64,000 bases of DNA, from contig NW_027271069.1 in assembly GCF_040938485.1 (NCBI RefSeq), forward strand, positions 4,154,001 through 4,218,000, read 5' to 3'. Source of the stretch: Diadema antillarum. Lineage: Eukaryota. Of this stretch, positions 11,450-29,200 are shown piece after piece (the first letter of the stretch is position 1; the number at the start of each line of letters is the position of its first letter). A program made the position numbers and the translations under genes. Below the pieces are notes generated by a model. It made no database searches, was not told where the DNA came from, and saw nothing but the letters and a program-made list of their open reading frames with translations.

Positions 11450-11738
11450 ACGCAGTGAGAGAAAAGGATGTAAAAAAATAAAAATAATTATAATAAATAG
11501 ATACAATATACCATTCCAGCTCTGAATATTAATGATCTTTTGTAGTAATGTGGTTTAGGCTGAGGTGTAGACAAAGATTATTTTCAAACGTGTGGAATAC
11601 AAACTGTATATGATACAGTAGTGCTGACGAGATTGAAAATCGTAAAAGAAGTACAAGTACATGTAGTACATGTAGTAGTATTAGAAGTAGTACACTGTAG
11701 TAGTAATCATGGTGATCATGTCAGTACAAATAATCATC

Positions 11739-11965
11739 NNNNNNNNNNNNNNNNNNNNNNNNNNNNNNNNNNNNNNNNNNNNNNNNNNNNNNNNNNNNNN
11801 NNNNNNNNNNNNNNNNNNNNNNNNNNNNNNNNNNNNNNNNNNNNNNNNNNNNNNNNNNNNNNNNNNNNNNNNNNNNNNNNNNNNNNNNNNNNNNNNNNNN
11901 NNNNNNNNNNNNNNNNNNNNNNNNNNNNNNNNNNNNNNNNNNNNNNNNNNNNNNNNNNNNNNNNN
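11739..11965. other. Assembly gap (N)
   Basis: Run of N. Confidence 1.
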
Positions 11966-13074
11966 AAAAGTTTGTTGTAGCAATGTTTACTATGACAAGT
12001 CTCTGGAATGGGCACAGTGTTTGACAGGATTTGCCTTTGTTGTGTGTCTGCAACAATAGTACTCTTCAGCAGACCCTGCACTCCATGCACATTCACAATA
12101 GAAAAAAAAAAACACTCAGACAAAGTGTCAATGTCACATCTACATACAAGTACACAGGGCACAACATGTATTTGGAAAATGGTGTTTTCATGACAACAGA
12201 CTGTGATGCTACCTCCGACATTATAACAATGCAGAAGCATTAAATCATGACACCTTCAATACATGTACACTAGATACTGTATATACATAGTTTTACGAAA
12301 ATGCAGCAACATAAACTTGTAATCACAAAATGAGCCAGTTTCTGTCTGTGTGGCCATTTAATGAAAATAATACCCCTAGTCCACCATAACTGATCACGAG
12401 GGCATTGCAAACAATTCTTCCCATATTCAGTGTTCATTTCCATGACATGCAACAATCAAAGCTACCACAGCCAACAGCCCATTCACTATTGAAATATTAT
12501 ATAGAATTTCTGATTTGGGGTACACCATTGTATCAACCACAGCAGATACAATTACTATAATTAGCCAGTGGAGCGTGTACTTCATTCCTTTATGTAATGT
12601 GGACTCTGGTGTCCCAGTAAAGGTGTGGAAGTGCATTACTATGGTAACAGGAGCTGAAAGTTTCATGAACCAACCCTAAGGGGAAACACTTCGTCGTCAT
12701 AACAACAGGTTAACATATTTTCCAAACCTCGTTCATTCACTTTGTCCCGACAGCAAATACATTGCATCTTGTCAATTCTAAAGGACTGATTACTGTGTAT
12801 ACACTGATCAAACCAGTGCATCCCATTTAACCTTTACATATCTTTATCAACTACACCTCACAAGATGTCAATGACAAAAAGGAATTAGTGGTCCTCAGAG
12901 AGTTAAAAAGGCACCAATCAAAATGATCACACTTCTTGAAACTATCAATTAAAGGGGAAATCTGCTCTAAAAATTAGTTTGTGTCAATAGAAACAATAAT
13001 GAGGAGAACAGGACAGCAAAAGATTGAGCAAATTCTGATAAAAATGGAAAAAAGAATTGAAGTTGTATCAATTA

Positions 13075-13284: not shown

Positions 13285-14141
13285 TAAAATACAAATTGGA
13301 TAACTCTGCGATGTCATATGTGAGCTCATCCTGTGAACTAAGAAAGAAGTAATTTTCATTCTCTCATCAAGTAAATTTCCAGTCGCACCTGCACTCTTCA
13401 TACAATCATCTTATATATTTTTCTACGCAACCCCTGCATGAAAAAAAATTCCATTATCTAAAGAGAAAGAGAAAAAGAGACAATTTATGGAAATTTGTGC
13501 ACAGCCGTAGGGCATATAAAAGGTGAGCTCACATACTACATCACACAGTAGGCAATTTGTTCTTCAGTGATCACACTTCAAAAAAATCACAACTTACTTA
13601 ATTCTGATCAGAATATGCTCAAACTTTCATTGTCTTGTTTTTGTTTTACTGCTTCTATTTACATAAATTAATTTTCCGGGTGGAATTTTGTTTTAAACCC
13701 AGGTGACTTTTACATTCTCAAAGCATATAACCGGTATGTGTATGTGATGACATCGTAGTCTGTTTGTCTTTAACCTGCATAACTGGAAGAAGTAAAAACC
13801 ATATTACACTGATCCTTTGGTATGCGGCAATCACTCAACATAAACCCAAACTGCAAGAAAGCTATAAGCATAGGATGCAATACAGGCACATCATTCATGA
13901 AAACCACAGTTTACTGCAGTGAGCAAGGAATACCCACATTCTTTCCGACTCTAAATACATTCTTCTGTCATATCTGCCAACCCAAGCATTCAGTAAATAC
14001 ATGTGTAATAACATCTAGCAGAAAATAATGCCAAACAAGGAATTTTCACCCATATGATTTCCCATACATCATTATTAACAGGTGTTGACAACATAGGAAA
14101 ATTAAGTTTAAGAAGTTACTTCTTTCCACACACAAAAAAAA

Positions 14142-16058: not shown

Positions 16059-17216
16059 AATAGGAATGTTATCAAGAGATTATTAAAGCAGAGGGGTGAA
16101 GACTTTAGTCAGTTGTCTCTCTCTGTACAAATGTATAAGACTGAAACTGCTGATCTATACATTGTATCATGTCAGAGAAAGGAACCAGGGGGGAATGTTC
16201 CTATTAAACAGGAACAGTTGGCAGGAATGCTCTTTTCCTAAAAAATGCCACTTGATCTTCAGAGATTAAAGATCAAGGAATGCCCTGATACATTTCAAAG
16301 AGCATTTGACTTAGACAAAAGTCGCTAGTCAAATTCACATCCTGTATGCAGGGTCTACTGAGAGAGTCCTAATCCTTGCGGGTTGGCAGCGTGAAAACGT
16401 TGAATTCCTGTGGTGTAACCACATTGCCTACAGAATCATTCTCAACGATACATATATTACTGTATGTCAAAAAAAAAAACACAATTACAACGGGACCCTC
16501 CGCAATGATATCTTTGAGAATATTGAATCAATCTTAATACATATTCAGGGTATGAAACTATAACTCATTGCCCACATCTTCCAGAAAACCCCATTCAATT
16601 TGCTTCAGTGGTCAAAGAGAAATGAGGAGTTTTGTAGAGGATGTCAGAAATCTCTTCTATCCAAGTTGTGTCTATTGTATTCACACACAAGAGCATCGAA
16701 ATGCTAAACTAGGAAGAATCATACTCATGACATGCTTTACAACAATCCACATTTCTCTGTGACCACTTATCAAAATCAAATGGGGTTTTCTGCAAAATAG
16801 AGCTAAGGTGTTCCATTTTAAGACTTTGAAGTAGCATTTAGACAGTTTAATCATATTGGGTGTTATCAATGTGAAAATCGGATTGTAATTCTTTTTGGGA
16901 CATACTGTACATGTACACACAATATCCACTCTTCCTGATGACAGTGAATAATATATCAGTCATAGTCTTTGAAATCACTGCACTGTCAAAGCACAGGAAT
17001 GACTGGACCCCCATGACCACATGTCATTCATTTCATATGGTGCAGAGCAGGGAAACTGGGCATGAAGGAACACTTCCAGCCTCATCCTTGGATTGGTCGG
17101 TCAAAGTGGGTGTGTCTGCACAGCTAGGAAATGATTGGATGAGACGGATTCAAAGGTTGTCCAGAGTCATACTTCCAGTGTTGACCACCACTATCCTACT
17201 ACCAGAGGTCCAGGCA

Positions 17217-20200
17217 TCATTGCCTTTCAAACATGGCTTTCAGGATGGCATAGCTCTCACTGTATCGGGACTGGTTCAGTTGAGATGCCGTCTTCCAGCT
17301 GGAGAGAAAAATAAAAAAACAAGACATACCTTGTATGGGTGTATATTGCTCTATTATGATACAGTGCACTCCCGTTATAGTGAACACGGTTGTAACAAAC
17401 TTTTATATGCAACGTACACAATAGCAAAATCAACATCCCCAAATTATCATCTATATACCGTATCTTGATACACTGTATTTGTTTGGCTATAACGAAATTT
17501 TGATACAGTGAAAAAAAAACCTATCGGCCCCACGGACCTTAAAGCCCGGTCACACAGCGCCATACGGCTTAATCACGGCCAAAACCCATCAAAAAGTGGT
17601 CTCCGATGAAGCAGACGATGTTGTTCGCGTTGATGTCAAGTTTAGGACGAGCTATGGTCAATTTATAGACGTGGCAGGACGTGGGGAAAAATCGGAACGG
17701 CGTTGGATTTTAGCCCGCGAACAACCACGGGCGGCACACGTGGTAAAGATGTGCGACACACGTGAAACACACGTGATGATCTGAGTTCTGGCAGTGATTA
17801 AAACTTGGGATACGCGGTAAGATGCAAAAGTCTAGCGGTCTGTCACGGGCAGAGCACGGTCATCGAACGCATGTTACGCATTGCTACACGGGAAATAGCG
17901 TGTGTTTAGCGGCCTATCACTGACAAATGGATTTTTCCGCGTACATAGCACTACCTAAGCCTGTTAAACGACGTCTCAAACAAGTTCTAAATACGATTGA
18001 TCACTGCCTAATCACTTCTGTATCACTTCTGATTTGCGGCATATAAATACATGTACAAAGTATAAAGTTCATATGAAATGAAAGGAAAATATAAACTGGA
18101 TTAAGACAATTACCTTCTATTAAAAGTTAGAAGATAACTGTCTTAACCCAATTTGTATTTCAATTTCATATGTACTTTGTCATTTCTTTTTTTGTTTGCT
18201 ATTGCTTTATTCTTTTTTTAAATTTTTTCATTTTGTTCTAACTTCAAATTTCACTTACTTTAATTATTTTTTTTTCAGTGGATGGTCATTTATTCAAATT
18301 TCTTTGTTTCTAATTATTAACCAGAGAAAACAGTAACACATTTCACACTTTGTACCAATTTTATTGGCATATTTACAGCAATGCATACACACCCAATCTT
18401 CTCAACCTAACAAACAATAGCATACACATGCACACATAGCTAATACTGGTCCTTGGCAGCCTAAACTAAGAATCAACTAACTAGCTAATCCTCAGATGAA
18501 GTGGAGTCCTGAGTCTGCTGTTCCTGAGGCCTGATCTGTAGTCCAGGAGAGGTGGCTGACTCATTGGGAGTGTTCATGGATGTCTGAGAGGCAAGGCTGG
18601 ATCTGCCTGCAGGTGGGAGCATGGTACTGTCCAAGCTGAGGTTAGCGGTGAGGTTAGCGTTCCATTCATCCCCCTGCATCACGTGCTGCTGCTGCTGGGG
18701 GTAGGTTGGCTGCTGGTCAGAGAACTGCGGAGGTGTAGGAGAGGGTGTAGTATCATTCTTCCGCATGGGGGGTAACGAGGTCTGCTGCATCAAGCGGCTG
18801 CCATACTGCCAGTTCTGCTGATACTGTGGGTTGTGCTGCCGGAAGCACTGCTGGCAGCTGTAGGGCTGGTTGAACTGCTGGTTTGAGGGCTGGCCGCGCA
18901 CTATGTCAAAGATCAGGTCCTTCATCTTGTCGTACTGCTCCTGGGGAGCTGTACGCAGGGTGTCAGCAACAAACCGTACGAAGGGCTCACGGTCAGACTT
19001 GGGCCTCTCCTCAACAAACTTCTCCAGGAGGGCTTGGTTGGCCTGCATGGTGGCGCGGAGTTCTCGCATCCAGGTGTCTTCCTCTTCCTGGTACTCTTCA
19101 TCCCTCCTCCTCTTGTCACGCTTCCGGCTGCGGCTGGACGTGGATGTGGGCTGAGATGTAGAGACCTGGTCAACAGCTGCGGACTCCACGTCCTCGAGGA
19201 CGTGAGCATGCCTGTCACCATCAGAGTCCACTGAGGCCGAGGGGGAGGGGGGACGTGAGACCGTGGACGTGGACGTGGCAGTGGCAGAGGCAGAGGCAGA
19301 GGGGACCCGGGTTAGAGTGACGAGGGGATCTCTGGTGTCACTGGAGATGGAACCTGAAAGGTTTAGAACATTCATTTAGTTATATGGCATTGACATTTTG
19401 CACGTAAAAGCACTTCATACATTGAAATGTGAAACGAAATTGACAAATGCAATGAAATTCAAAACACGTTTGAAATCAATGTAATGAAATGTACTGACCT
19501 TTGTAGAAGCCACAGTGCTGCAGGACCCAGGTCTCCCTCTCTGTGAGCATCTTGGTCACCTGGCCACTAGTCTTCTTGGAGAGCTTCACATACCAGTCCT
19601 TTATTCCTTTCCACCACTGCTCTAGGTGCTTCACATTGATCCCCAGCTCTTGGGCCTTCATCTCCCAGGCAGCCCTCTTCTGCTTGTAGGTCTTCTTGCT
19701 GCGCATCCAGAGGTAGGAGTTGCCCCTCAGCCACTCAAGAATGTCCTCCTCTACAGCAGTGTCAAGACTCCAGTCCTTCTTGGGGGCTTTGGGGGCAGCC
19801 TTCTCCTTGCCCTTGCCCTGTCCACGTCCAAGGCCCTTGCCTACGAGCACTGGCTCTTCTTCCTCGTCCTGAGCAGCTTCCACAAAGAATGTTTCTCCTT
19901 CCTGAAGGGCTGGGGGGCTGACTTCTCCAAGCTCCACGGGGGCCTCAGGGGTGGCAGCAGAGGTAGTGGTAGCAGTGGTAGCAGCAGGGGTAGTACCTGT
20001 ACATGAAAAATATATTCATTTAGTGACACGCTTCTAATTTTCTATTTCTAAATTGAAATTCAAAATTGAAATTTGAAAGTAACAAAATTTGCAAATGAAA
20101 AGACATTGAAATGAATAAAATAAAATGTACTGACCATCAGCAGCAACCTCAGCTTCTCCAGGAGCAACAGGACCAGCATCAGCCTGAGGGTCAGGGTTTG

Positions 20201-23200
20201 GACTGGCAGCACCAGCAGGAGGAGCATGGACCTGGACTGTCACCTGGGCCTGGGAGTCTTGGGGAGACTCATCCTCAGCTGGGGCTTTGGTATTCGTTGA
20301 CCTCTTCATGGCAGGGGAACCCTTCTCCCTGGGCATGATGAAACTGAAAACACCGAACGAACTTGCGTGGAAGTGTGGACTGTACAAGATCTGGATCGGC
20401 AACTGTGAAGACCAGCCGTGCGCGGCTGCTTTTATGCCGCACTTCCGACGCCGCCGAGCCACGGTTACCCGTCATTGGGCAGTGCTATGGTAGTGGAGTG
20501 CCCGTTTTACGTCCGTGCTAAACATGTGATTGGCAGTGCTACAGACGCGATGAGGCCGCGGTTAGCCGTGGTAACTTGCCTCTTTTTTTTCCCGCTTTCA
20601 AACACATGCGAACCTTTTTTTAGCCTTACAAGTGGCTGGACATGGTTAGCCGTGCTTTAGCAGTGGAACAGCCGCCGACGGCCATACCCCGTACAAAGCA
20701 CAGTCAAACCAACATTGACCTAAAATTACCACTTACGACTACATCCCCCAAATTTTCATAACTTTTTGTACGTGATTTAGACATGGAGTGCTGTGTGACC
20801 GGGGCTTTAATACACGGAAACTCCATAGAACAATTGGGACTTTCATTTTGCCCACGAGGTAAGTGACATTCGGCTAATCCAAGGTCGAGGTAACAAGGTT
20901 GACTGTACAACATACTTTCTCTTTTGTAACAATGTCCTTAGATTGATATACATGTACAAATACACAAATGCAAGTGACACTACAAAGAAGGTCCCAACAC
21001 ATTGAGTCCAACTTGTAGGAGAGTCCCCTCTTTAGCAAATATTCATGTCAATTAATTCTTGAACCACAGGACTACTTAAGATGAATATTCAGTCTATTTG
21101 CAGGTCTGCAAGAGTAATGGCCCTGTCACACCTTTACGCTTTAGCCAATGTATGAAAAAATTGACGAATAAACATCAAATATGTTACAGGTACCACGGAT
21201 AAGCCACCTATGGATAGGAGTTCAGCGCACTGGTATACAGTTTAGTATGGCAAGATCGTTCAAGTCTTTATTAAGCATGCATAAAACTTTTGGAGGTATA
21301 TGCCCTGCACACATGTACCATAAATTGTAGGTACCGTAGTCAAAATGCATCAAGATAATGCCTAGCGCACCCATAACATATATTTAACCTATCAAGTAGT
21401 ATGCTTGGTACCTAATCAAACTCACCTCCCACACACTTCGATGTATGTAGACGTATTCGACGTTTTCTGGACAACTACAGAATTTACTGAGTGTGTTTCT
21501 AAATTACACATACCATATGATGACATATGGGTAGCGTTCAGGCGAACTGGTTTACACAAATGGGATTCACAGGAGGAATCCATCTGCATTTCTCAAGACA
21601 CTATGGTTACTGTCACACAAGGAATGTTAGTGTGCATTCTAATTTCATAAATTTCGCGAGACCCAAGATGTGTGAATTTAAAATGCATGAGGACCACGCA
21701 TCCTTTACCAACTTCCTTGTATATGTCCCTAGCGATGTACGATGAGCTGCTAGCCACAGTAGGTCCAAGGATTTTTTTTTTCCCTCATATTTGGCCGTAT
21801 TTCCGAGTTACTTGTATTGCGGGTTGGAAGATTCACACTCATTTTAGCTGACTTCATCTTGAAGTGGAAATTGCTTTCAAAAAAAAAAAGATATCAAATA
21901 GCTCAAGCCTCCCTCAGCACAGTTGAGCCACTCATCCACCGTGAAAAATTTGGGCCATCTTTGCCATAGGGTAGGAGAAAATCATGTTTTGTTTTTGAAT
22001 GGGTCTACATGTTCTCAAGTCAAGTGCAGACATTATTTCTGTAAATTAGCAAATATGATGACATGTATATACAGTAGGTGCATTGAATCAATGAACTGTG
22101 AAATTCCCAAAGCAAATGGATCGTTTCCAAGGTTGCAGACGCATCTTAAATCAATTCCACATCATGGCCATGATTCAAGGAACAATTTACAGTTCACTGT
22201 TTAATTGTACATGTATTCCACATTATTTTCATAAGCAGTCATGAAACGGAATCAATTATCACTTCGTGAAACATAAAACTGAAGTCATCTTGATATTTTC
22301 TTGCTAAAGTATCCCTGTTTCAGCTACTTTATTTTAAGGCCTCTCTAATGGACCTTATCCATAAACACACACATTCACACCAACACAAGTATACACGTGC
22401 AGGCATACACATTCACTTATACTAACCCACTCATATACTCGTTAACTCAACTGCAAGCATTACACTACACACGCTTATGTGCGCATAGTCAAATATAAAC
22501 TTCGCACAAACATACATGCATGCTTGCTATTGCACACACACTGACTCACAAATGCACCTCATCCTTCCTCCGTCATTTTCATTCACTTCATTATTTTCTC
22601 CATCTCTCTCATTTGAGCTGATTTATGACAAGTCATCCATGAATTTTCTTTGAGGCTGCTGCTGTGGAAGCCAAGCACTTCATGTACGACAATGTTTATC
22701 CGCATTTCTGTTAGCATGCAGCTTGATTTATTGACAAGACACAAGTTCTTTTATGAAATCAACACATATTTCATACAAAATATTTAATTTGACCATTGCA
22801 TCTTATATCTATGATATGTCTCGTGTATGCTTCAAATCCTTATATATCAATTTCTTTTTTGTTATTGTATATTTTTTGAGTGGAAAAACTGAAATTCAAA
22901 AATGAAATGAATCAAATCATATACTACTTGGTAGTTAGCAATCAATAAACATATTCATCAACCCCACTCTTTTCAGCAACCAATTAAAACATGTTTGTAT
23001 GAGGAAGTGACTATTTTATAATTACCTAAAATGAAGAAACAAAATTTTAAAGTTTAAACATGTAATGTTATAAACCATTCTTGTTGGTCTGAACTTGAAT
23101 GCCATGTTACTTTAGTAGGACTTACCCTAACTAGGCCAGGGGTCTGGGGAGCCTTGCAGCAGCTACATTTTATACACTCAAGTTTTGATACCTAATTTGT

Positions 23201-26200
23201 GCAGCGTTGACCATGATTTCGGTAACAGATTACAATTATCAATCACAAGTTCAGCAAAATGATCAAATTCTTAATTTGCCTGTGTATTAGCCTATGGCTT
23301 TTAAAAAAAAAAAATACTCCAAAAATCAACACCATTCTTACTATTACAATATCATTACCTATGTTATGAATGCAATTTCTGGTTGGTAAAAAAAAAAAAT
23401 AAAAAAAAAAGATAATGAAACTTACAGAAAAAGAAATACATAAGAATAAAAACAAAAATATGAAGAATAAATATCAGCTTGTTATTTGCATGCTACTATT
23501 TATATTCATGATTCATAAATATACAATGTAAATACACTGAAAAAAACAAAGTTTTATCACATCAACATATGACTCTTATTTGTCTGCTTACAACCAATAT
23601 TCAAGCCATTTTCACTAATATATCATAGCAAAATAATGATTAAATAACTAAAATAAATAAATAACTGAATAACTAAAGTCATGAAAATGTGCATATCATA
23701 TAATAAAAAAATAAAAACGCAAACAAGAAAATACATCACACTTTATTCTACACATATTATTTTATAAATATGGCAATTTTCGTGCACATTGAGTTGACCT
23801 TTGCCGAAATATATTGAGGGGCCTGGGAGGCCCCCCAGCTTTAAGAACTCTCGAAATACTCTGGCTCAGTTAGGATTAAGACCAATGGTAACATTTTGTA
23901 GACATGAAAGACATGAATTACTTGTCACTAAAACACTCAGTAGTAATGAACATCTTTGATGATGGATCTTGTGCATACTTCAGACACAATGAAACAAATG
24001 AAACAACAAAATTAATGACAATGGTCATACATGACAATATACAACGCTACAAAAATGGCTAAAACACTGGACTGTTTCTCTTAGTCGTGAGAAGCACATA
24101 ACTGTTACTGTCACTAGTTCTTCTCTGGTGGTGGAGGTCTCTTCAGCTCCCCAGAGATGCTGTCTGCAGCATCAGAACCACTGGACAGGTCGAGCAGTCC
24201 TGAGCATCCAGAGATGCAGAGGCGGATCCAAGAATTCTGTAAAGGGAAGGTGCCTTTACAGAATTAAAGGGGGCGCATTTGCCCCCCCCCCCCTCATTTT
24301 TCTCTTTTTATTTCTTTTGTGTTAACAAAAAATAAAGAGGGGGTGCGCCCGGTGCGCCCCCCTCTGGATCTGCCACTGAGATGTAAGAACACAGACTCTG
24401 ACTGTGACTGTCCATGGCGCTGGGCTCTGGTTCAGTATCTGATAGACGACCCTAGAGTAGCATACAGTGGCATGCTTGGCTGCTACTTCAGGTACTGTAG
24501 CTGCAGTGGCTGCATGCAAGTACACTGGTTCACACAGTCGGCTGTCTGTGAACCCTAGACTGGACGCAGTCGGTGCCTTGTGTCTGCACATGTGGGGAGA
24601 TGGCTAGTACATCTCCATCGCCATAGGGTGTGGGTAGCTGGTGCTAGACTGGGTCACCGGGAAACAGGAGCTGGAAAGGTGGGGAGTCTGGAAGGTTAAT
24701 CCTCATCACTCTCATCCATCAGCTCACCGAGGATGATGTTGATGCGTGACCGCGCCTTCCGGAACTTGCGCTTGGACATGCCAAGCAGGCTGTCACGCAC
24801 GTAATTGGCAAAGGTAACAGCAGCTGAGATGGGCTGAGGCTGAGAGAGACTTTTGAAGAGCTCCTCAAACTCGGTCACCTTCTTCTGGAGTGACTGCAGC
24901 AATGGGTCATCCTCCTGACCATGCCTGTCCCTGGGTTGTGAGGATGAGGAGGGGACAGAGGGGGGCATGCTGTCATCATCAATCACAATGGCAGCCTCAG
25001 TAGCCTTGGTAGCCTCAGTAGCCCTGGCAGTCTCAGTAGCCCTGGCAGTTTCATGGTCCCTGCTGTGTGCTGCCGTGGTTGCCTTCATCTGCAATAATGA
25101 CAATTGATTAGTGAATACAAGGCAAAAATGCAAGGCAAATTTAAAGATTATTAATGAAAGCAAAATTTAATATCAAATACATTAGAAAACAAATGGTAAT
25201 AATTGTACTGAGGTATACTTACAGCGTTCATAGACCTGGCACGATGGCGGACAACAGTTTTGAGGAAGCTGAAGTTTGCCTTCACCCACTGTTCCCTCTC
25301 TGTCAGTTCGCGGGCACCCTCACCGCCCTTAATCCTGTCGAGACGGGTGTGGGTGTCTCGCACAGACTTAAACCAGCCTTGAAGATGCTGAGCTGTCTTC
25401 CCCATGATCTTAGCTTGATCCCTCCAGAGCTTCGCCTTCTTGTCCAACCTCCGATAGCCCGTCTTCTTGATGTCCCACAGGATGTTGTTCTTGCGAATGA
25501 AATCGCACATGAGCTGCTCCTCGTGGACTTCAAGTACAAACTGCACCTTCCTGACCCTCTTCTTCTTAGGGAGGGCTGGCCCAGGAGAGGTCGAGGCCAC
25601 GGACACAGTTACTGATGCCACTGACCATCCATCATCTCCATCAGAGGGTGAGGGTAAGGGTGAGGCTGTGAGTGATGATTGATCTTCCCTGCATCCATGT
25701 CCATGTCCAGAAGACTCCCTTGGCATGTCGGTGATGTCAATACTGCGATGTAAAAGTGCCGTTATGATTTGAATCGAGCAGCAGCCTTTCATAGGCTACT
25801 ACACAAATCATCAGAGATGCACTGCTGCATGCTATGCTTGAAGCTAAAACATGTTTTCAAATATAAAACATTCTCCAACAACCACGTTCAGGTAAGCTCT
25901 GACACTGCAGCAATTCTGGTGAACCTTTTTGGTATATATAGTCTGCATTTCTGCCATTACCTAATTGCATTCTTTCACACGGTGTATACGTGTACAGATA
26001 AGAGCAGAAATAGACAGTTTTGCGAGCACACAAGAAGTATGTTTTGGCTTTAAGTTGTGAACGCCGGCAATAAGCTCGGCATTCGTTGGTATAACTTATC
26101 TATAAGTTATTGAAATGTTCTGTCTAAAGTTACTAACACTCTACATATAGGTCCTATGTGAAAATCATCAGCAAAAAGCTATGTATATGCCCAAAATTGA

Positions 26201-29200
26201 AAAATACATTGTAATCCAGTGCCAGCCTAATGTTTTAAAGAAATCTTTAGACATCGGCATGCACTGGCTAAATCATCATGGTGTGACAGGGCCATTACAA
26301 AAAGATGAAATTTGTAACTGGGCCACAATTTCAAAGATTTGGTTAAGTGGGGACTGTGGGGACTCTATAGCATAAAGAATAAATATTCCATAGGAAATAT
26401 ACATCCTCACTTCTTCTTGGTACTTACTCATTCCTGATGTCTTTCCATCTCTGAATGTGGCCATTTAGAAGTGTTTCTTTGGATGGAGCCTGACTGGAAT
26501 CCTACATTGAGGGGGAAATAATTATCAGAATTAGACAAAATATATCAAAACAAAAAAACTAAACAGCAACAAATGGAAAAAAAAAAAAACCCACTCTTTT
26601 GATAATTTGAGAACAGAGCTTGGAATATTAATCAGTGTTTATTTTTTGTCATATTAAAATCAATATATTATAACGCGCATCATTTATCGTTTTACACTTT
26701 TAATGTAATACCACTTTATCAGTAGGGACATTTGTGAGTTGGAATGTACAACTGAATTTGTCATGTCTGTGCAGCTGTGTGTTGCTGTTGTTTTAAACTT
26801 TGGTAAGAGACAGTCAAGCACAATCAAATAAAGCAAATCTTGTAAGAGGCTGTTATTAGTGTCTGTGCATGCCCATTGCACTACATACCACCACATAAAA
26901 AAGCAATACAGTTTGGATCTAATAAGTCATTGCCAAGATACTGTAGCTAAGGGCACTACTGACTCATTCTAACACCCGACCATAATTAGTCCATCGCAAT
27001 TCATTCCTTAAAGCTGTACTCATGCAAACTTATTTTAACACAAAGCCTTTCTCCACGCAGTCAAAGAAAGCATAGTATCTCAGTGAGGTCCACGAGGGGT
27101 TTTAGCATGTCGCTGCGACATGCTAAAATTTTTGCGCGACATCCTTCAAAACTTGCGACATTCTAAGCGCCATGCCAATAAAACTGCGACATGCTAAAAG
27201 TAACTAACTCGCAAATGACTTACGAGAGTGCTCCTTGTTGAAAGGAGCAGCAGTTTACAAGCGCCAAAAGTTTATCCACAGTCACCGCACCGATCACAAC
27301 ACAACGCGGCTCAACAACAAGCTATCAGTACAACAGTCTCGCACAACACCACATCACACACTTGCTCACTATCTCCCTCACCTCCCTGCTCACATGTGTA
27401 TGCTATGGGATTGCGCTCTGATTCGGGATCCACACACACAGCAATTTGTGTGAAGTAACACCTATGCAGCGGCACAGACAGCCGCCTGTATGCATGTGAG
27501 AGGGAGAGAGAGGACGGAAAGAGAGGGTCGGAGGCCGAGGGAGGCTGAGGAAGGCTGACACGTGCTCGCTTGTTGTCACGCTTGTTGTCGGGTTACGCAA
27601 AAACAAACGATATGAAATGCATGCCCCCCTTCGCCAAAGGTTGTATTTTATATATATATATATATTTTTTTTTTGCTGCTTTGGTTTGTCTGTTCGTTTG
27701 TCTGCCTGTCTGTCTCTCTATTCGCAAAATAGGTCAAAAGTTGGGAACAGATTAGGATGAAATTTCAGGAACGGTTGGTTGGTAAAATGGCGCAAGGAAC
27801 AGATGATTAAATTTTGGTAGTGAGAAGGATTTATGATACCACTGGAATTCAACGTCAGGATATCCAGGATTTTTTCTTAGACTTTGTTTCGTATATTTGA
27901 AAGGATTCGTATCAATTCTATAGGAAGCTTGCCATCGGCAATAGCAATTACGCAAAATTAGATGCGTTCAAAGCATTGCCGCAGAGAGAAAATTACCTCC
28001 ATCTTTCGTTAAAAAAAAATCAAAAACAAAAACGAACGATGGAGTAAGCAAATGCAAATTGTTTAATCTTTTTTTTTTTGGTAGATTCAGCGGGTTAGTT
28101 TTTCTCTAAAAAGCCATGCGTTCCATTTGAACCTTTAGTAAGTTAGATTTTACTCGAGCGCCGAAGTTGAATTTATCCCAAGGATCTCGTCGCAATACCG
28201 AGTTTCCAATGTGTATTCATTTTCGCGTAGCTTTCGGTGCTGCAAAATTTTGCTAGGGCCTAAGTTTAATACTAAACTAATTTCTGTCGTTTCTCGCACC
28301 TCGTTTGGTACGATTTCTTCCCTTTTATATCACTTTATCCGTTCCCTTTATACTTTGAAGTAATTAAACGTAATTCCGTGTCTCGCCCTGTTATTTTTGT
28401 AACGGCGATTTCTCCGCTTCGCTGCAATACTTTTTCGAATCGAAGCGACGGAGCTCGGAGTTTGATCCCAGCAGCCGCTTCGATGTGCTGTTTGTTGTAT
28501 TTTCTAAATAAAAATGTTTGTGTTGTTGGGAGGTGTTGATACTTTGTATTTGTTATTTATTTTCCTAGGTATTTATCTCGAGGGATTAGGGCCTATGCGT
28601 GTTTCTTAATGTTGATAGGAAAAGGCTAAAATGATCTTGAGTGATGTCTGATGGTGATGATGATAACTATGCTGGTGACTGGTGTAAAAAGACGGATTCC
28701 TGTGAATGCTGAGCGTACGTGACGTTTGTTTATTTCCCTTTCCCTCTTACTCTTCTTTCCCCCTTACTCTCCTTTCCCCTCTCAAGAATGATAAAAAAAG
28801 AAATTACATACACCTCACAACAAAAAGAACCACGTGCTATGGCAACCTTCGTAAAGTTCAATCTAAATGTTCAATATCAGCAAAGAATAAGGGGAAAGCA
28901 CGAATGACAATAAATAAAAGCGAAGAGATCGTGTATGCAGTCTCTTCGGCTAGAAGAAACTTGACACCCCACCCCTCTCCCTTGTGGAAATTTCCACAAA
29001 AGCAGGTGCCACACCCAGGTGCGTGCCAGACGAAAGAATGCGCGCACTGGAATAAACAGCGTGTAAATATCCTGGAAATATCCATCGAAGAACCAGCTCA
29101 TTAGTTGAATTAAAGGAATCATTGCAAAGATATCATGATTCTATTTCTATAGCCTTTCTTTTGGCGCATAGTAGGAAACATCGAACAGTCGATTATAGTG

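What the first reader, a model, noticed from the sequence alone, without database searches (positions are those of the whole stretch)
17542..20806. Transposase-less Harbinger-like element that keeps an intact, spliced 522-aa MADF-BESS gene
Seen: matched TIRs enclose a three-exon gene with an open frame and canonical splice sites, and no DDE nuclease ORF or remnant that I can recognise. Established: autonomous PIF/Harbinger elements encode two proteins, a DDE nuclease and a Myb/SANT/MADF DNA-binding partner, and MADF-BESS is the Adf-1-type transcription-factor architecture. Inference: this is a mobile 'DNA-binding-protein-only' cassette. It could be a half-autonomous element that supplies its own end-binding subunit and borrows a nuclease in trans, a repressor of its family, or a gene undergoing domestication. 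Retention of ORF, introns and both TIRs suggests recent movement or selection.
Basis: partly seen in the sequence, partly recalled or inferred. Interest (0 to 1): 0.8.

Follow-up and report, generated by a model that had tools for sequence, protein, structure and literature searches.

The report
Harbinger transposon copy missing its nuclease
This is a real jumping-gene copy of the known PIF/Harbinger kind that has lost its cutting enzyme gene through one clean internal deletion but still carries its DNA-binding partner gene, a state already described in sea urchins, sea snakes and nematodes.

Summary
Window 17542-20806 is a 3,265-bp element with matched terminal inverted repeats and a 3-bp TTA duplication on each side. 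It holds one open three-exon, 522-codon gene on the minus strand and no nuclease.

Relatives show what it is. About eight independent relatives, 80-85% identical in DNA, came from public contigs, including a teleost fish. All carry a DDE_Tnp_4/Plant_tran nuclease gene or its remnant, convergent and just downstream of the same gene. The window copy is colinear with them end to end, introns included, except for one gap of about 1.7-2.1 kb (junction at 18050-18057). That gap removes the whole nuclease gene.

The retained protein is MADF-type at the family level: 107 of 132 relatives hit Pfam MADF, though the window protein itself does not. BESS was never detected. The window protein also lacks two conserved C-terminal segments through in-frame deletions. 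dN/dS is inconclusive.

"Solo-ORF" Harbinger variants that keep only the DNA-binding protein are published (Galbraith 2021; Sato 2026). This is therefore a new member of a known kind.

The scan noted similar "MADF gene without transposase" loci on two other pieces of this genome (s1-225763, s1-225759), and this same stretch in s1-208777.

The parts
17539..17541 (.). Target-site duplication TTA (left)
   Evidence: Read directly. It matches TTA at 20807-20809. Sister elements have TAA/TAA (L003) and TTA/TTA (L002).
17542..17584 (+). Terminal inverted repeat. In gene orientation this is the end next to the lost nuclease gene.
   Evidence: Inverted repeat I1. The exact 13-mer is at 17546-17558. 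The same terminus is found in L002, L003, L013 and L014.
17585..18050 (-). Subterminal region. In sister elements it lies between the nuclease start codon and the end.
   Evidence: blastn: window 18050-17539 aligns with L002 12975-13518 at 84.7% and with L003 8127-8681 at 79.6%.
18050..18057 (.). Internal deletion junction. About 1.68 kb (relative to L002) or 2.09 kb (relative to L003) is missing here, including the whole nuclease gene.
   Evidence: L002 11293-12974 has no counterpart in the window. The L002 nuclease CDS is 11625-12923.
18057..18185 (.). Imperfect palindrome in the region between the two convergent genes; the deletion starts at its edge.
   Evidence: Inverted repeat I5, arms 18057-18079 and 18163-18185. 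L002 and L004 carry the same palindrome.
18206..18365 (-). 3' untranslated stretch with three AATAAA signals, 120, 191 and 274 nt after the stop
18485..19353 (-). Exon 3 (stop at 18485-18487). It holds a conserved helical core encoded at 18890-19084. Two in-frame deletions relative to all relatives lie near 18893-18896 (about 36-39 codons) and 18679-18686 (about 22-24 codons).
19354..19498 (-). Intron 2 (GT...AG)
   Evidence: It is absent from L001 exactly at this junction and present at 86-87% identity in L002 and L003.
19499..19996 (-). Exon 2. The MADF-type DNA-binding domain is encoded at about 19500-19772.
19997..20134 (-). Intron 1 (GT...AG)
   Evidence: It is 93-95% identical in L002 and L003 and absent from L001.
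20135..20336 (-). Exon 1, coding part, ATG at 20336
20337..20763 (-). 5' subterminal region and presumed promoter of the retained gene
   Evidence: 87-88% identical to L002 and L003. Promoter function is inferred only.
20764..20806 (-). Terminal inverted repeat (end next to the retained gene)
20807..20809 (.). Target-site duplication TTA (right)

Best explanation
The element is a non-autonomous internal-deletion derivative of an ordinary two-gene PIF/Harbinger transposon. The parent type is about 4.8-5.5 kb. Its layout is: end, three-exon MADF/Myb-like gene, then a convergent DDE nuclease gene, then the other end.

In this copy one deletion of about 1.7-2.1 kb removed the nuclease gene with its start region. 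The deletion begins at the edge of a small palindrome between the two genes. It most likely arose by interrupted gap repair after excision, or by replication slippage at the palindrome; this origin is inferred.

Everything else survived: both ends and about 500 bp of subterminal sequence on each side, the presumed promoter region, three exons, two introns and the polyadenylation signals.

The copy cannot cut itself out. It could move only if a full-length relative in the same genome supplied the nuclease. It may still make a DNA-binding protein that recognises the family's ends. Both of these last points are inferred and were not tested.
For: Colinearity with sister elements at 80-85% over the whole length, with a single large gap at 18050/18057.

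Sister elements carry DDE_Tnp_4/Plant_tran genes or remnants at exactly that place: L002, L003, L004 and L005-L008, the fish loci L012 and L013, and L014 and L015. Among about eight independent relatives with enough flank, none lacks it.

Same termini and a 3-bp TWA duplication.

No nuclease remnant in the element or in the window.

The retained protein belongs to a family in which 107 of 132 representatives hit Pfam MADF_DNA_bdg. It keeps all eight nearly invariant family positions. The model of the domain is confident and helical (pLDDT above 90 over residues 79-160).

Splicing as modelled is backed by an intron-less relative contig.

Published precedent for deletion-derived solo-ORF Harbingers: PMC8437027 and PMC13668399.
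Against: No copy from the same genome could be compared. It is therefore unknown whether the deletion happened before or after this insertion, and whether a nuclease donor exists in this genome.

The open 522-codon frame and two deletions that both stay in frame could hint at constraint. By chance, both staying in frame has odds of about 1 in 9. Pairwise dN/dS of 0.41-0.64 shows some purifying selection in the family's history.
Confidence: 0.85

Rival explanations
1. Functional partitioning, or a 'half-autonomous' lineage. The MADF-only form is a multi-copy, still-mobile lineage in this genome. It supplies the end-binding subunit in trans and borrows the nuclease from a few full-length or nuclease-only copies, as proposed for Harbinger-1M_cIno.
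For: Both ends, the long subterminal regions and the whole transcription unit are retained. A second, unrelated MADF-only element with Harbinger-like ends lies next door at 21114-26298. Two first-stage notes report similar loci elsewhere in this genome; these are unchecked. Precedents: 452 intact DNA-binding-only variants in Laticauda colubrina and the C. inopinata family.
Against: Only one copy is in hand. On the window's own branch there are 14 synonymous and 28 non-synonymous changes, omega about 0.58, which is not distinguishable from neutral (p 0.10). Introns are as conserved as exons. Two segments conserved in all relatives, including fish, are deleted. None of about eight sampled relatives elsewhere is MADF-only.
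Confidence: 0.15
2. Repressor. The shortened DNA-binding protein occupies the family's ends or titrates the nuclease and so damps transposition, in the manner of KP-type P-element derivatives.
For: The DNA-binding domain looks intact, while conserved C-terminal segments are missing. This is the pattern expected of a competitor. The analogy with KP rests on general knowledge and was not tested here.
Against: There is no expression data, no binding data and no sign of selection. The most conserved C-terminal core (encoded at 18890-19084) is retained, so partner binding may be normal.
Confidence: 0.06
3. Domestication in progress. The gene is being kept by the host as a transcription factor.
For: The frame is open and the introns are retained. 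MADF and Myb-like partners of Harbingers have been domesticated repeatedly (PMC9710019 and PMC9392472, listed).
Against: The element still has perfect transposon ends and a target duplication. The nearest relatives are mobile two-gene elements at only 80-85% identity. Constraint is weak or undetectable. Conserved segments are lost.
Confidence: 0.03

Closest known systems
Solo-ORF (DNA-binding-protein-only) variants of Harbinger-Snek and Harbinger-Snek-like elements of sea urchins (Galbraith et al. 2021, PMC8437027)
   Same: Harbinger derivatives made by large deletions that keep the ends, the target duplication and only one of the two genes. They are reported in a sea urchin (S. purpuratus) and in sea kraits. 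The family is spread patchily among marine animals.
   Different: Those variants were shown to be multi-copy. Here a single copy is in hand. Whether this family is Harbinger-Snek itself could not be tested, because no sequence of it is available by reference.
Harbinger-1M_cIno of Caenorhabditis inopinata (Sato et al. 2026, PMC13668399)
   Same: A MADF-bearing, DDE-less Harbinger derivative with a TWA duplication and long retained terminal regions. The nuclease is thought to act in trans.
   Different: That element is 1.6 kb, has many copies, is expressed, and was caught inserting de novo. The window copy is 3.3 kb, and its copy number, expression and mobility are unknown.
Canonical two-gene PIF/Harbinger elements (for example Harbinger3_DR; Sinzelle et al. 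2008, cited from general knowledge and within)
   Same: Terminal inverted repeats, a 3-bp TWA duplication and a Myb/SANT/MADF-type partner gene. Sister copies have the DDE_Tnp_4 nuclease in convergent orientation.
   Different: This copy has no nuclease gene.
KP-type internally deleted P elements (general knowledge)
   Same: An internal deletion derivative that still encodes a DNA-binding protein able to recognise the family's ends.
   Different: A different superfamily. In KP the DNA-binding part is a truncated transposase, whereas here it is a separate partner protein. No repressor activity has been shown here.
Domesticated Harbinger partner genes (NAIF1/MSANTD family, insect MADF partners; PMC9392472 and PMC9710019, listed)
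   Same: Descended from the same class of Harbinger DNA-binding gene.
   Different: Domesticated genes have lost the transposon ends and are conserved at orthologous sites. This copy keeps the ends and the duplication.

Membership tests
PIF/Harbinger superfamily | 3-bp target-site duplication, consensus TWA | tested here: met
   TTA at 17539-17541 and 20807-20809. Relatives have TAA/TAA (L003) and TTA/TTA (L002). The TTAA (piggyBac/Kolobok) reading is excluded by L003, whose flanks cannot give TTAA.
PIF/Harbinger superfamily | Terminal inverted repeats shared by family members | tested here: met
PIF/Harbinger superfamily | DDE nuclease of the DDE_Tnp_4 / Plant_tran type | tested here: not met
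   Absent from this copy and from the whole window. Present in colinear sister elements at the place of the deletion. The copy is therefore a non-autonomous member, not an autonomous one.
PIF/Harbinger superfamily | Second gene for a Myb/SANT/MADF-type DNA-binding protein | tested here: met
MADF domain (Pfam PF10545) | Score above the Pfam gathering cut-off | tested here: inconclusive
   The window protein itself gives no hit at E<=1. However, 107 of 132 family representatives hit at E<=0.01, best 4e-13. Three of ten long relatives pass the cut-off. The window's exon 2 is 30% identical (E 2e-14) to a neighbouring protein that passes. The Foldseek search of the model gave only weak matches to three-helix DNA-binding domains.
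BESS motif (Pfam PF02944) | Match to the BESS profile | tested here: not met
   No hit in the whole exon 3, in ten long relatives, in the cut-out conserved core of four proteins at E<=10, or in 132 relatives. A resemblance by eye (D..F......L......K..I..I) remains unverified.
Solo-ORF / functionally partitioned Harbinger lineage | Several copies sharing the same deletion at different sites, and a nuclease source in the same genome | not testable with these tools
   The genome is not in any searchable collection.
Domesticated transposon gene | Loss of transposon ends; purifying selection after immobilisation | tested here: not met
   The ends and the duplication are intact. The window branch has omega about 0.58, not different from neutral.

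The most novel reading that the evidence does not exclude
The nuclease-less form is one member of a proliferating MADF-only lineage in this sea urchin. Its protein, which lacks two conserved C-terminal segments, acts in trans on the family's ends, either as the shared end-binding subunit or as a damper of transposition. This would be a second, independent animal case of the division of labour proposed in C. inopinata. A neighbouring unrelated MADF-only element hints that the state recurs in this genome.
Probability: 0.15. Interest if true: 0.5.

Novelty: new member of a known kind. Interest (0 to 1): 0.27.

Why it matters
The element is a clean, well-bounded example of how a two-gene transposon decays into a one-gene derivative. 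It adds an echinoderm case to the published solo-ORF Harbingers. Its main use is for annotation: the 522-codon gene should be labelled as transposon-borne, not as a host MADF-BESS transcription factor. If same-junction copies and a nuclease donor were found in the genome, it could serve as a test system for in-trans complementation between the two Harbinger proteins. As it stands it opens no new question.

Tried and rejected
1. TTAA-target superfamilies (piggyBac, Kolobok). The window's flanks read TTAA on both sides, but L003 has CGTAA/TAAGC flanks that allow only a 3-bp TAA. Rejected.

2. Direct Pfam assignment of MADF and BESS to the window protein: no hits.

3. Profile of the family against PDB sequences: only low-complexity matches. 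Foldseek with the domain model: nothing at E<=0.001.

5. Same-genome copies. The search of earlier findings by sequence was blank. The metagenome scan gave two short relatives only. The protein databases hold no copy closer than 88% for exon 2 or 66% for exon 3.

6. Strict parsimony count of window-specific changes: too few sites, 17 changes. It was replaced by polarised counts, which were still inconclusive.

7. A global MAFFT alignment across the deletion misaligned the 3' terminal region. The blastn figures were used for that segment instead.

8. Identification of the assemblies ERZ26052378 and GCA_029979725.1 and the run SRR19345929 through the paper library: no paper names them.

9. The host-gene context (a first-stage note says last intron of LIN37) was not verified. 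There were 219 short ORFs to screen, which was judged low-yield.

10. The joined 522-residue protein was never assembled or searched.
Full report
**The observation**

The stretch 17542-20806 is bounded by inverted repeats. The arms 17545-17584 and 20764-20803 are 40 nt at 78%. The terminal 13-mer is exact at both ends and occurs nowhere else in the 64-kb window.

The 3-bp duplication TTA lies at 17539-17541 and 20807-20809. The flanks also read TTAA. However, a relative (L003) has flanks that allow only a 3-bp TAA, so the target is TWA, as in PIF/Harbinger, and not TTAA.

On the minus strand there is an open reading frame in three pieces:
- exon 1, 20336-20135
- exon 2, 19996-19499
- exon 3, 19353-18485, stop included

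Both introns have GT...AG, and the phases add up to 522 codons. Every search used single exons by reference.

**No nuclease**

Nothing in the element's remaining 1.4 kb resembles a DDE nuclease. Pfam finds nothing in its ORFs. tblastn with the nucleases of sister elements gives only noise against the element and against the whole window (best E 0.3-2.4).

**Relatives**

Exon 3 finds relatives at 54-66% protein identity. Exon 2 finds 372 family representatives, the best at 88%.

Fetching their contigs settled the origin of the element. A gene with Pfam DDE_Tnp_4/Plant_tran lies just downstream of the homologous gene, on the opposite strand, in:
- L002 (ENA)
- L003 (an NCBI assembly)
- L004 (a JGI sample)
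- L005-L008 (Logan)

. The same holds for two loci of the teleost Odontesthes bonariensis (L012, L013) and for two further ENA contigs (L014, L015). The nuclease is intact in some and decayed in others. The ends are the same: AGGCCCGGTCACACA... with TAA or TTA outside.

The window element aligns with L002, L003 and L004 at 80-85% DNA identity along its whole length, including both introns and both subterminal regions. There is one large gap. Window 18057|18050 corresponds to L002 11292|12975. The missing 1,682 bp of L002 hold the entire nuclease coding sequence (11625-12923) and its start region. Against L003 the missing piece is about 2.09 kb.

The left breakpoint sits at the edge of a small palindrome (18057-18185) that the relatives share. 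A possible 3-4 nt microhomology at the junction is only suggestive at this divergence.

The window copy is thus an internal-deletion derivative of a conventional two-gene Harbinger of about 4.8-5.5 kb.

**The retained gene**

The window's own exons give no Pfam hit at E<=1. At the family level the DNA-binding domain is clearly MADF:
- 107 of 132 representatives hit MADF_DNA_bdg, best 4e-13.
- Three of ten long relatives pass the curated cut-off.
- Exon 2 is 30% identical (E 2e-14) to a neighbouring protein that passes.

The window protein keeps all eight nearly invariant positions of the family. An AlphaFold model built on the family alignment gives four confident helices over residues 79-160. 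Foldseek finds only weak matches to three-helix DNA-binding domains.

BESS was never detected in any of these scans:
- the whole exon
- ten long relatives
- the cut-out conserved core at E<=10
- all 132 relatives

The C-terminal core (encoded at 18890-19084) is strongly conserved from this element to the fish copies. It resembles BESS by eye, and that remains a lead only.

The gene model itself is backed by L001. This Logan contig of a relative lacks both introns. For intron 2 the loss is exactly at the predicted junction; the intron 1 alignment is less clear. L001 is itself decayed, and its library type is unknown.

Three AATAAA signals follow the stop, before the deletion point. The whole transcription unit therefore survived.

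**Is the gene kept by selection?**

The evidence does not say so.
- Pairwise dN/dS against relatives is 0.41-0.64. This reflects the family's history in active elements.
- Changes polarised onto the window's own branch are 14 synonymous and 28 non-synonymous. Omega is about 0.58, not different from neutrality (p 0.10) nor from the L002 branch.
- Introns are as conserved as exons.
- The window protein lacks two segments present in all eight aligned relatives or in the close ones. One is about 36-39 residues around an SWARP...ACTAS motif that is conserved even in fish. The other is about 22-24 residues. Both losses are in frame, which chance alone would give about one time in nine.

**What could not be tested**

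There is therefore no evidence on expression, on junction support in this species, on copy number or on presence/absence.

No copy from this genome is in the searchable collections. It remains unknown whether the deletion preceded the insertion, that is, whether the nuclease-less form ever moved. It is also unknown whether a nuclease donor exists here.

Earlier follow-up notes of the scan name the species as the sea urchin Diadema antillarum. I did not verify this.

**Comparison with what is known**

Galbraith et al. 2021 describe multi-copy solo-ORF variants of Harbinger-Snek. [quoted passage not shown] They attribute these variants to large deletions, and they find the family scattered among echinoderms, bivalves and teleosts.

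Sato et al. 2026 describe MADF-only derivatives in C. inopinata that are expressed and active, with the nuclease supplied in trans.

The present copy is a new member of that kind, with none of the supporting population data.

**Verdict**

The element is an ordinary deletion derivative of a known family. Interest is low to moderate.

Noticed in passing
window 21114-26298: A second element with Harbinger-like ends (TGGCCCTGTCACACC..., 41-nt arms at 85%). It carries a different minus-strand MADF gene (ORFs 25151-25792 and 24696-25163; Pfam MADF 4e-5). No DDE ORF or tblastn trace was found. Its flanking triplets read TAA and TTA, so they are not an exact duplication. This is another nuclease-less, MADF-bearing derivative 300 bp from the first.
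   Followed up: partly
L013:7740-12504 and L012 (Odontesthes bonariensis, GCA_027942865.1): The same family, with nearly the same terminal sequence and both genes, is present in a teleost. Its nuclease is 76-81% identical in protein to that of L002, and its MADF protein is about 64-72% identical to the window's. The fish MADF genes are annotated as 'uncharacterized protein' (XP_075328548, XP_075322404). The patchy, high similarity fits horizontal spread among marine animals as reported in PMC8437027.
   Followed up: partly
L001:1-2219 (Logan SRR19345929): A relative's contig has both introns removed. It still includes a degenerate transposon end and 378 nt of outside flank, and it has a frameshift in exon 1. 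It is either a read-through spliced transcript of a decayed copy or a retro-copied version.
   Followed up: partly
L002:7917-8325 and 13549-13714: Extra copies of the left and right ends flank the full element, each with its own TTA. This suggests one copy inserted into or beside another copy of the same family.
   Followed up: no
window 17080-17099 and 20871-20890: A 20-nt inverted repeat (80%) lies in the DNA just outside the element on both sides. The element may have inserted into another repeat or hairpin-forming sequence.
   Followed up: no
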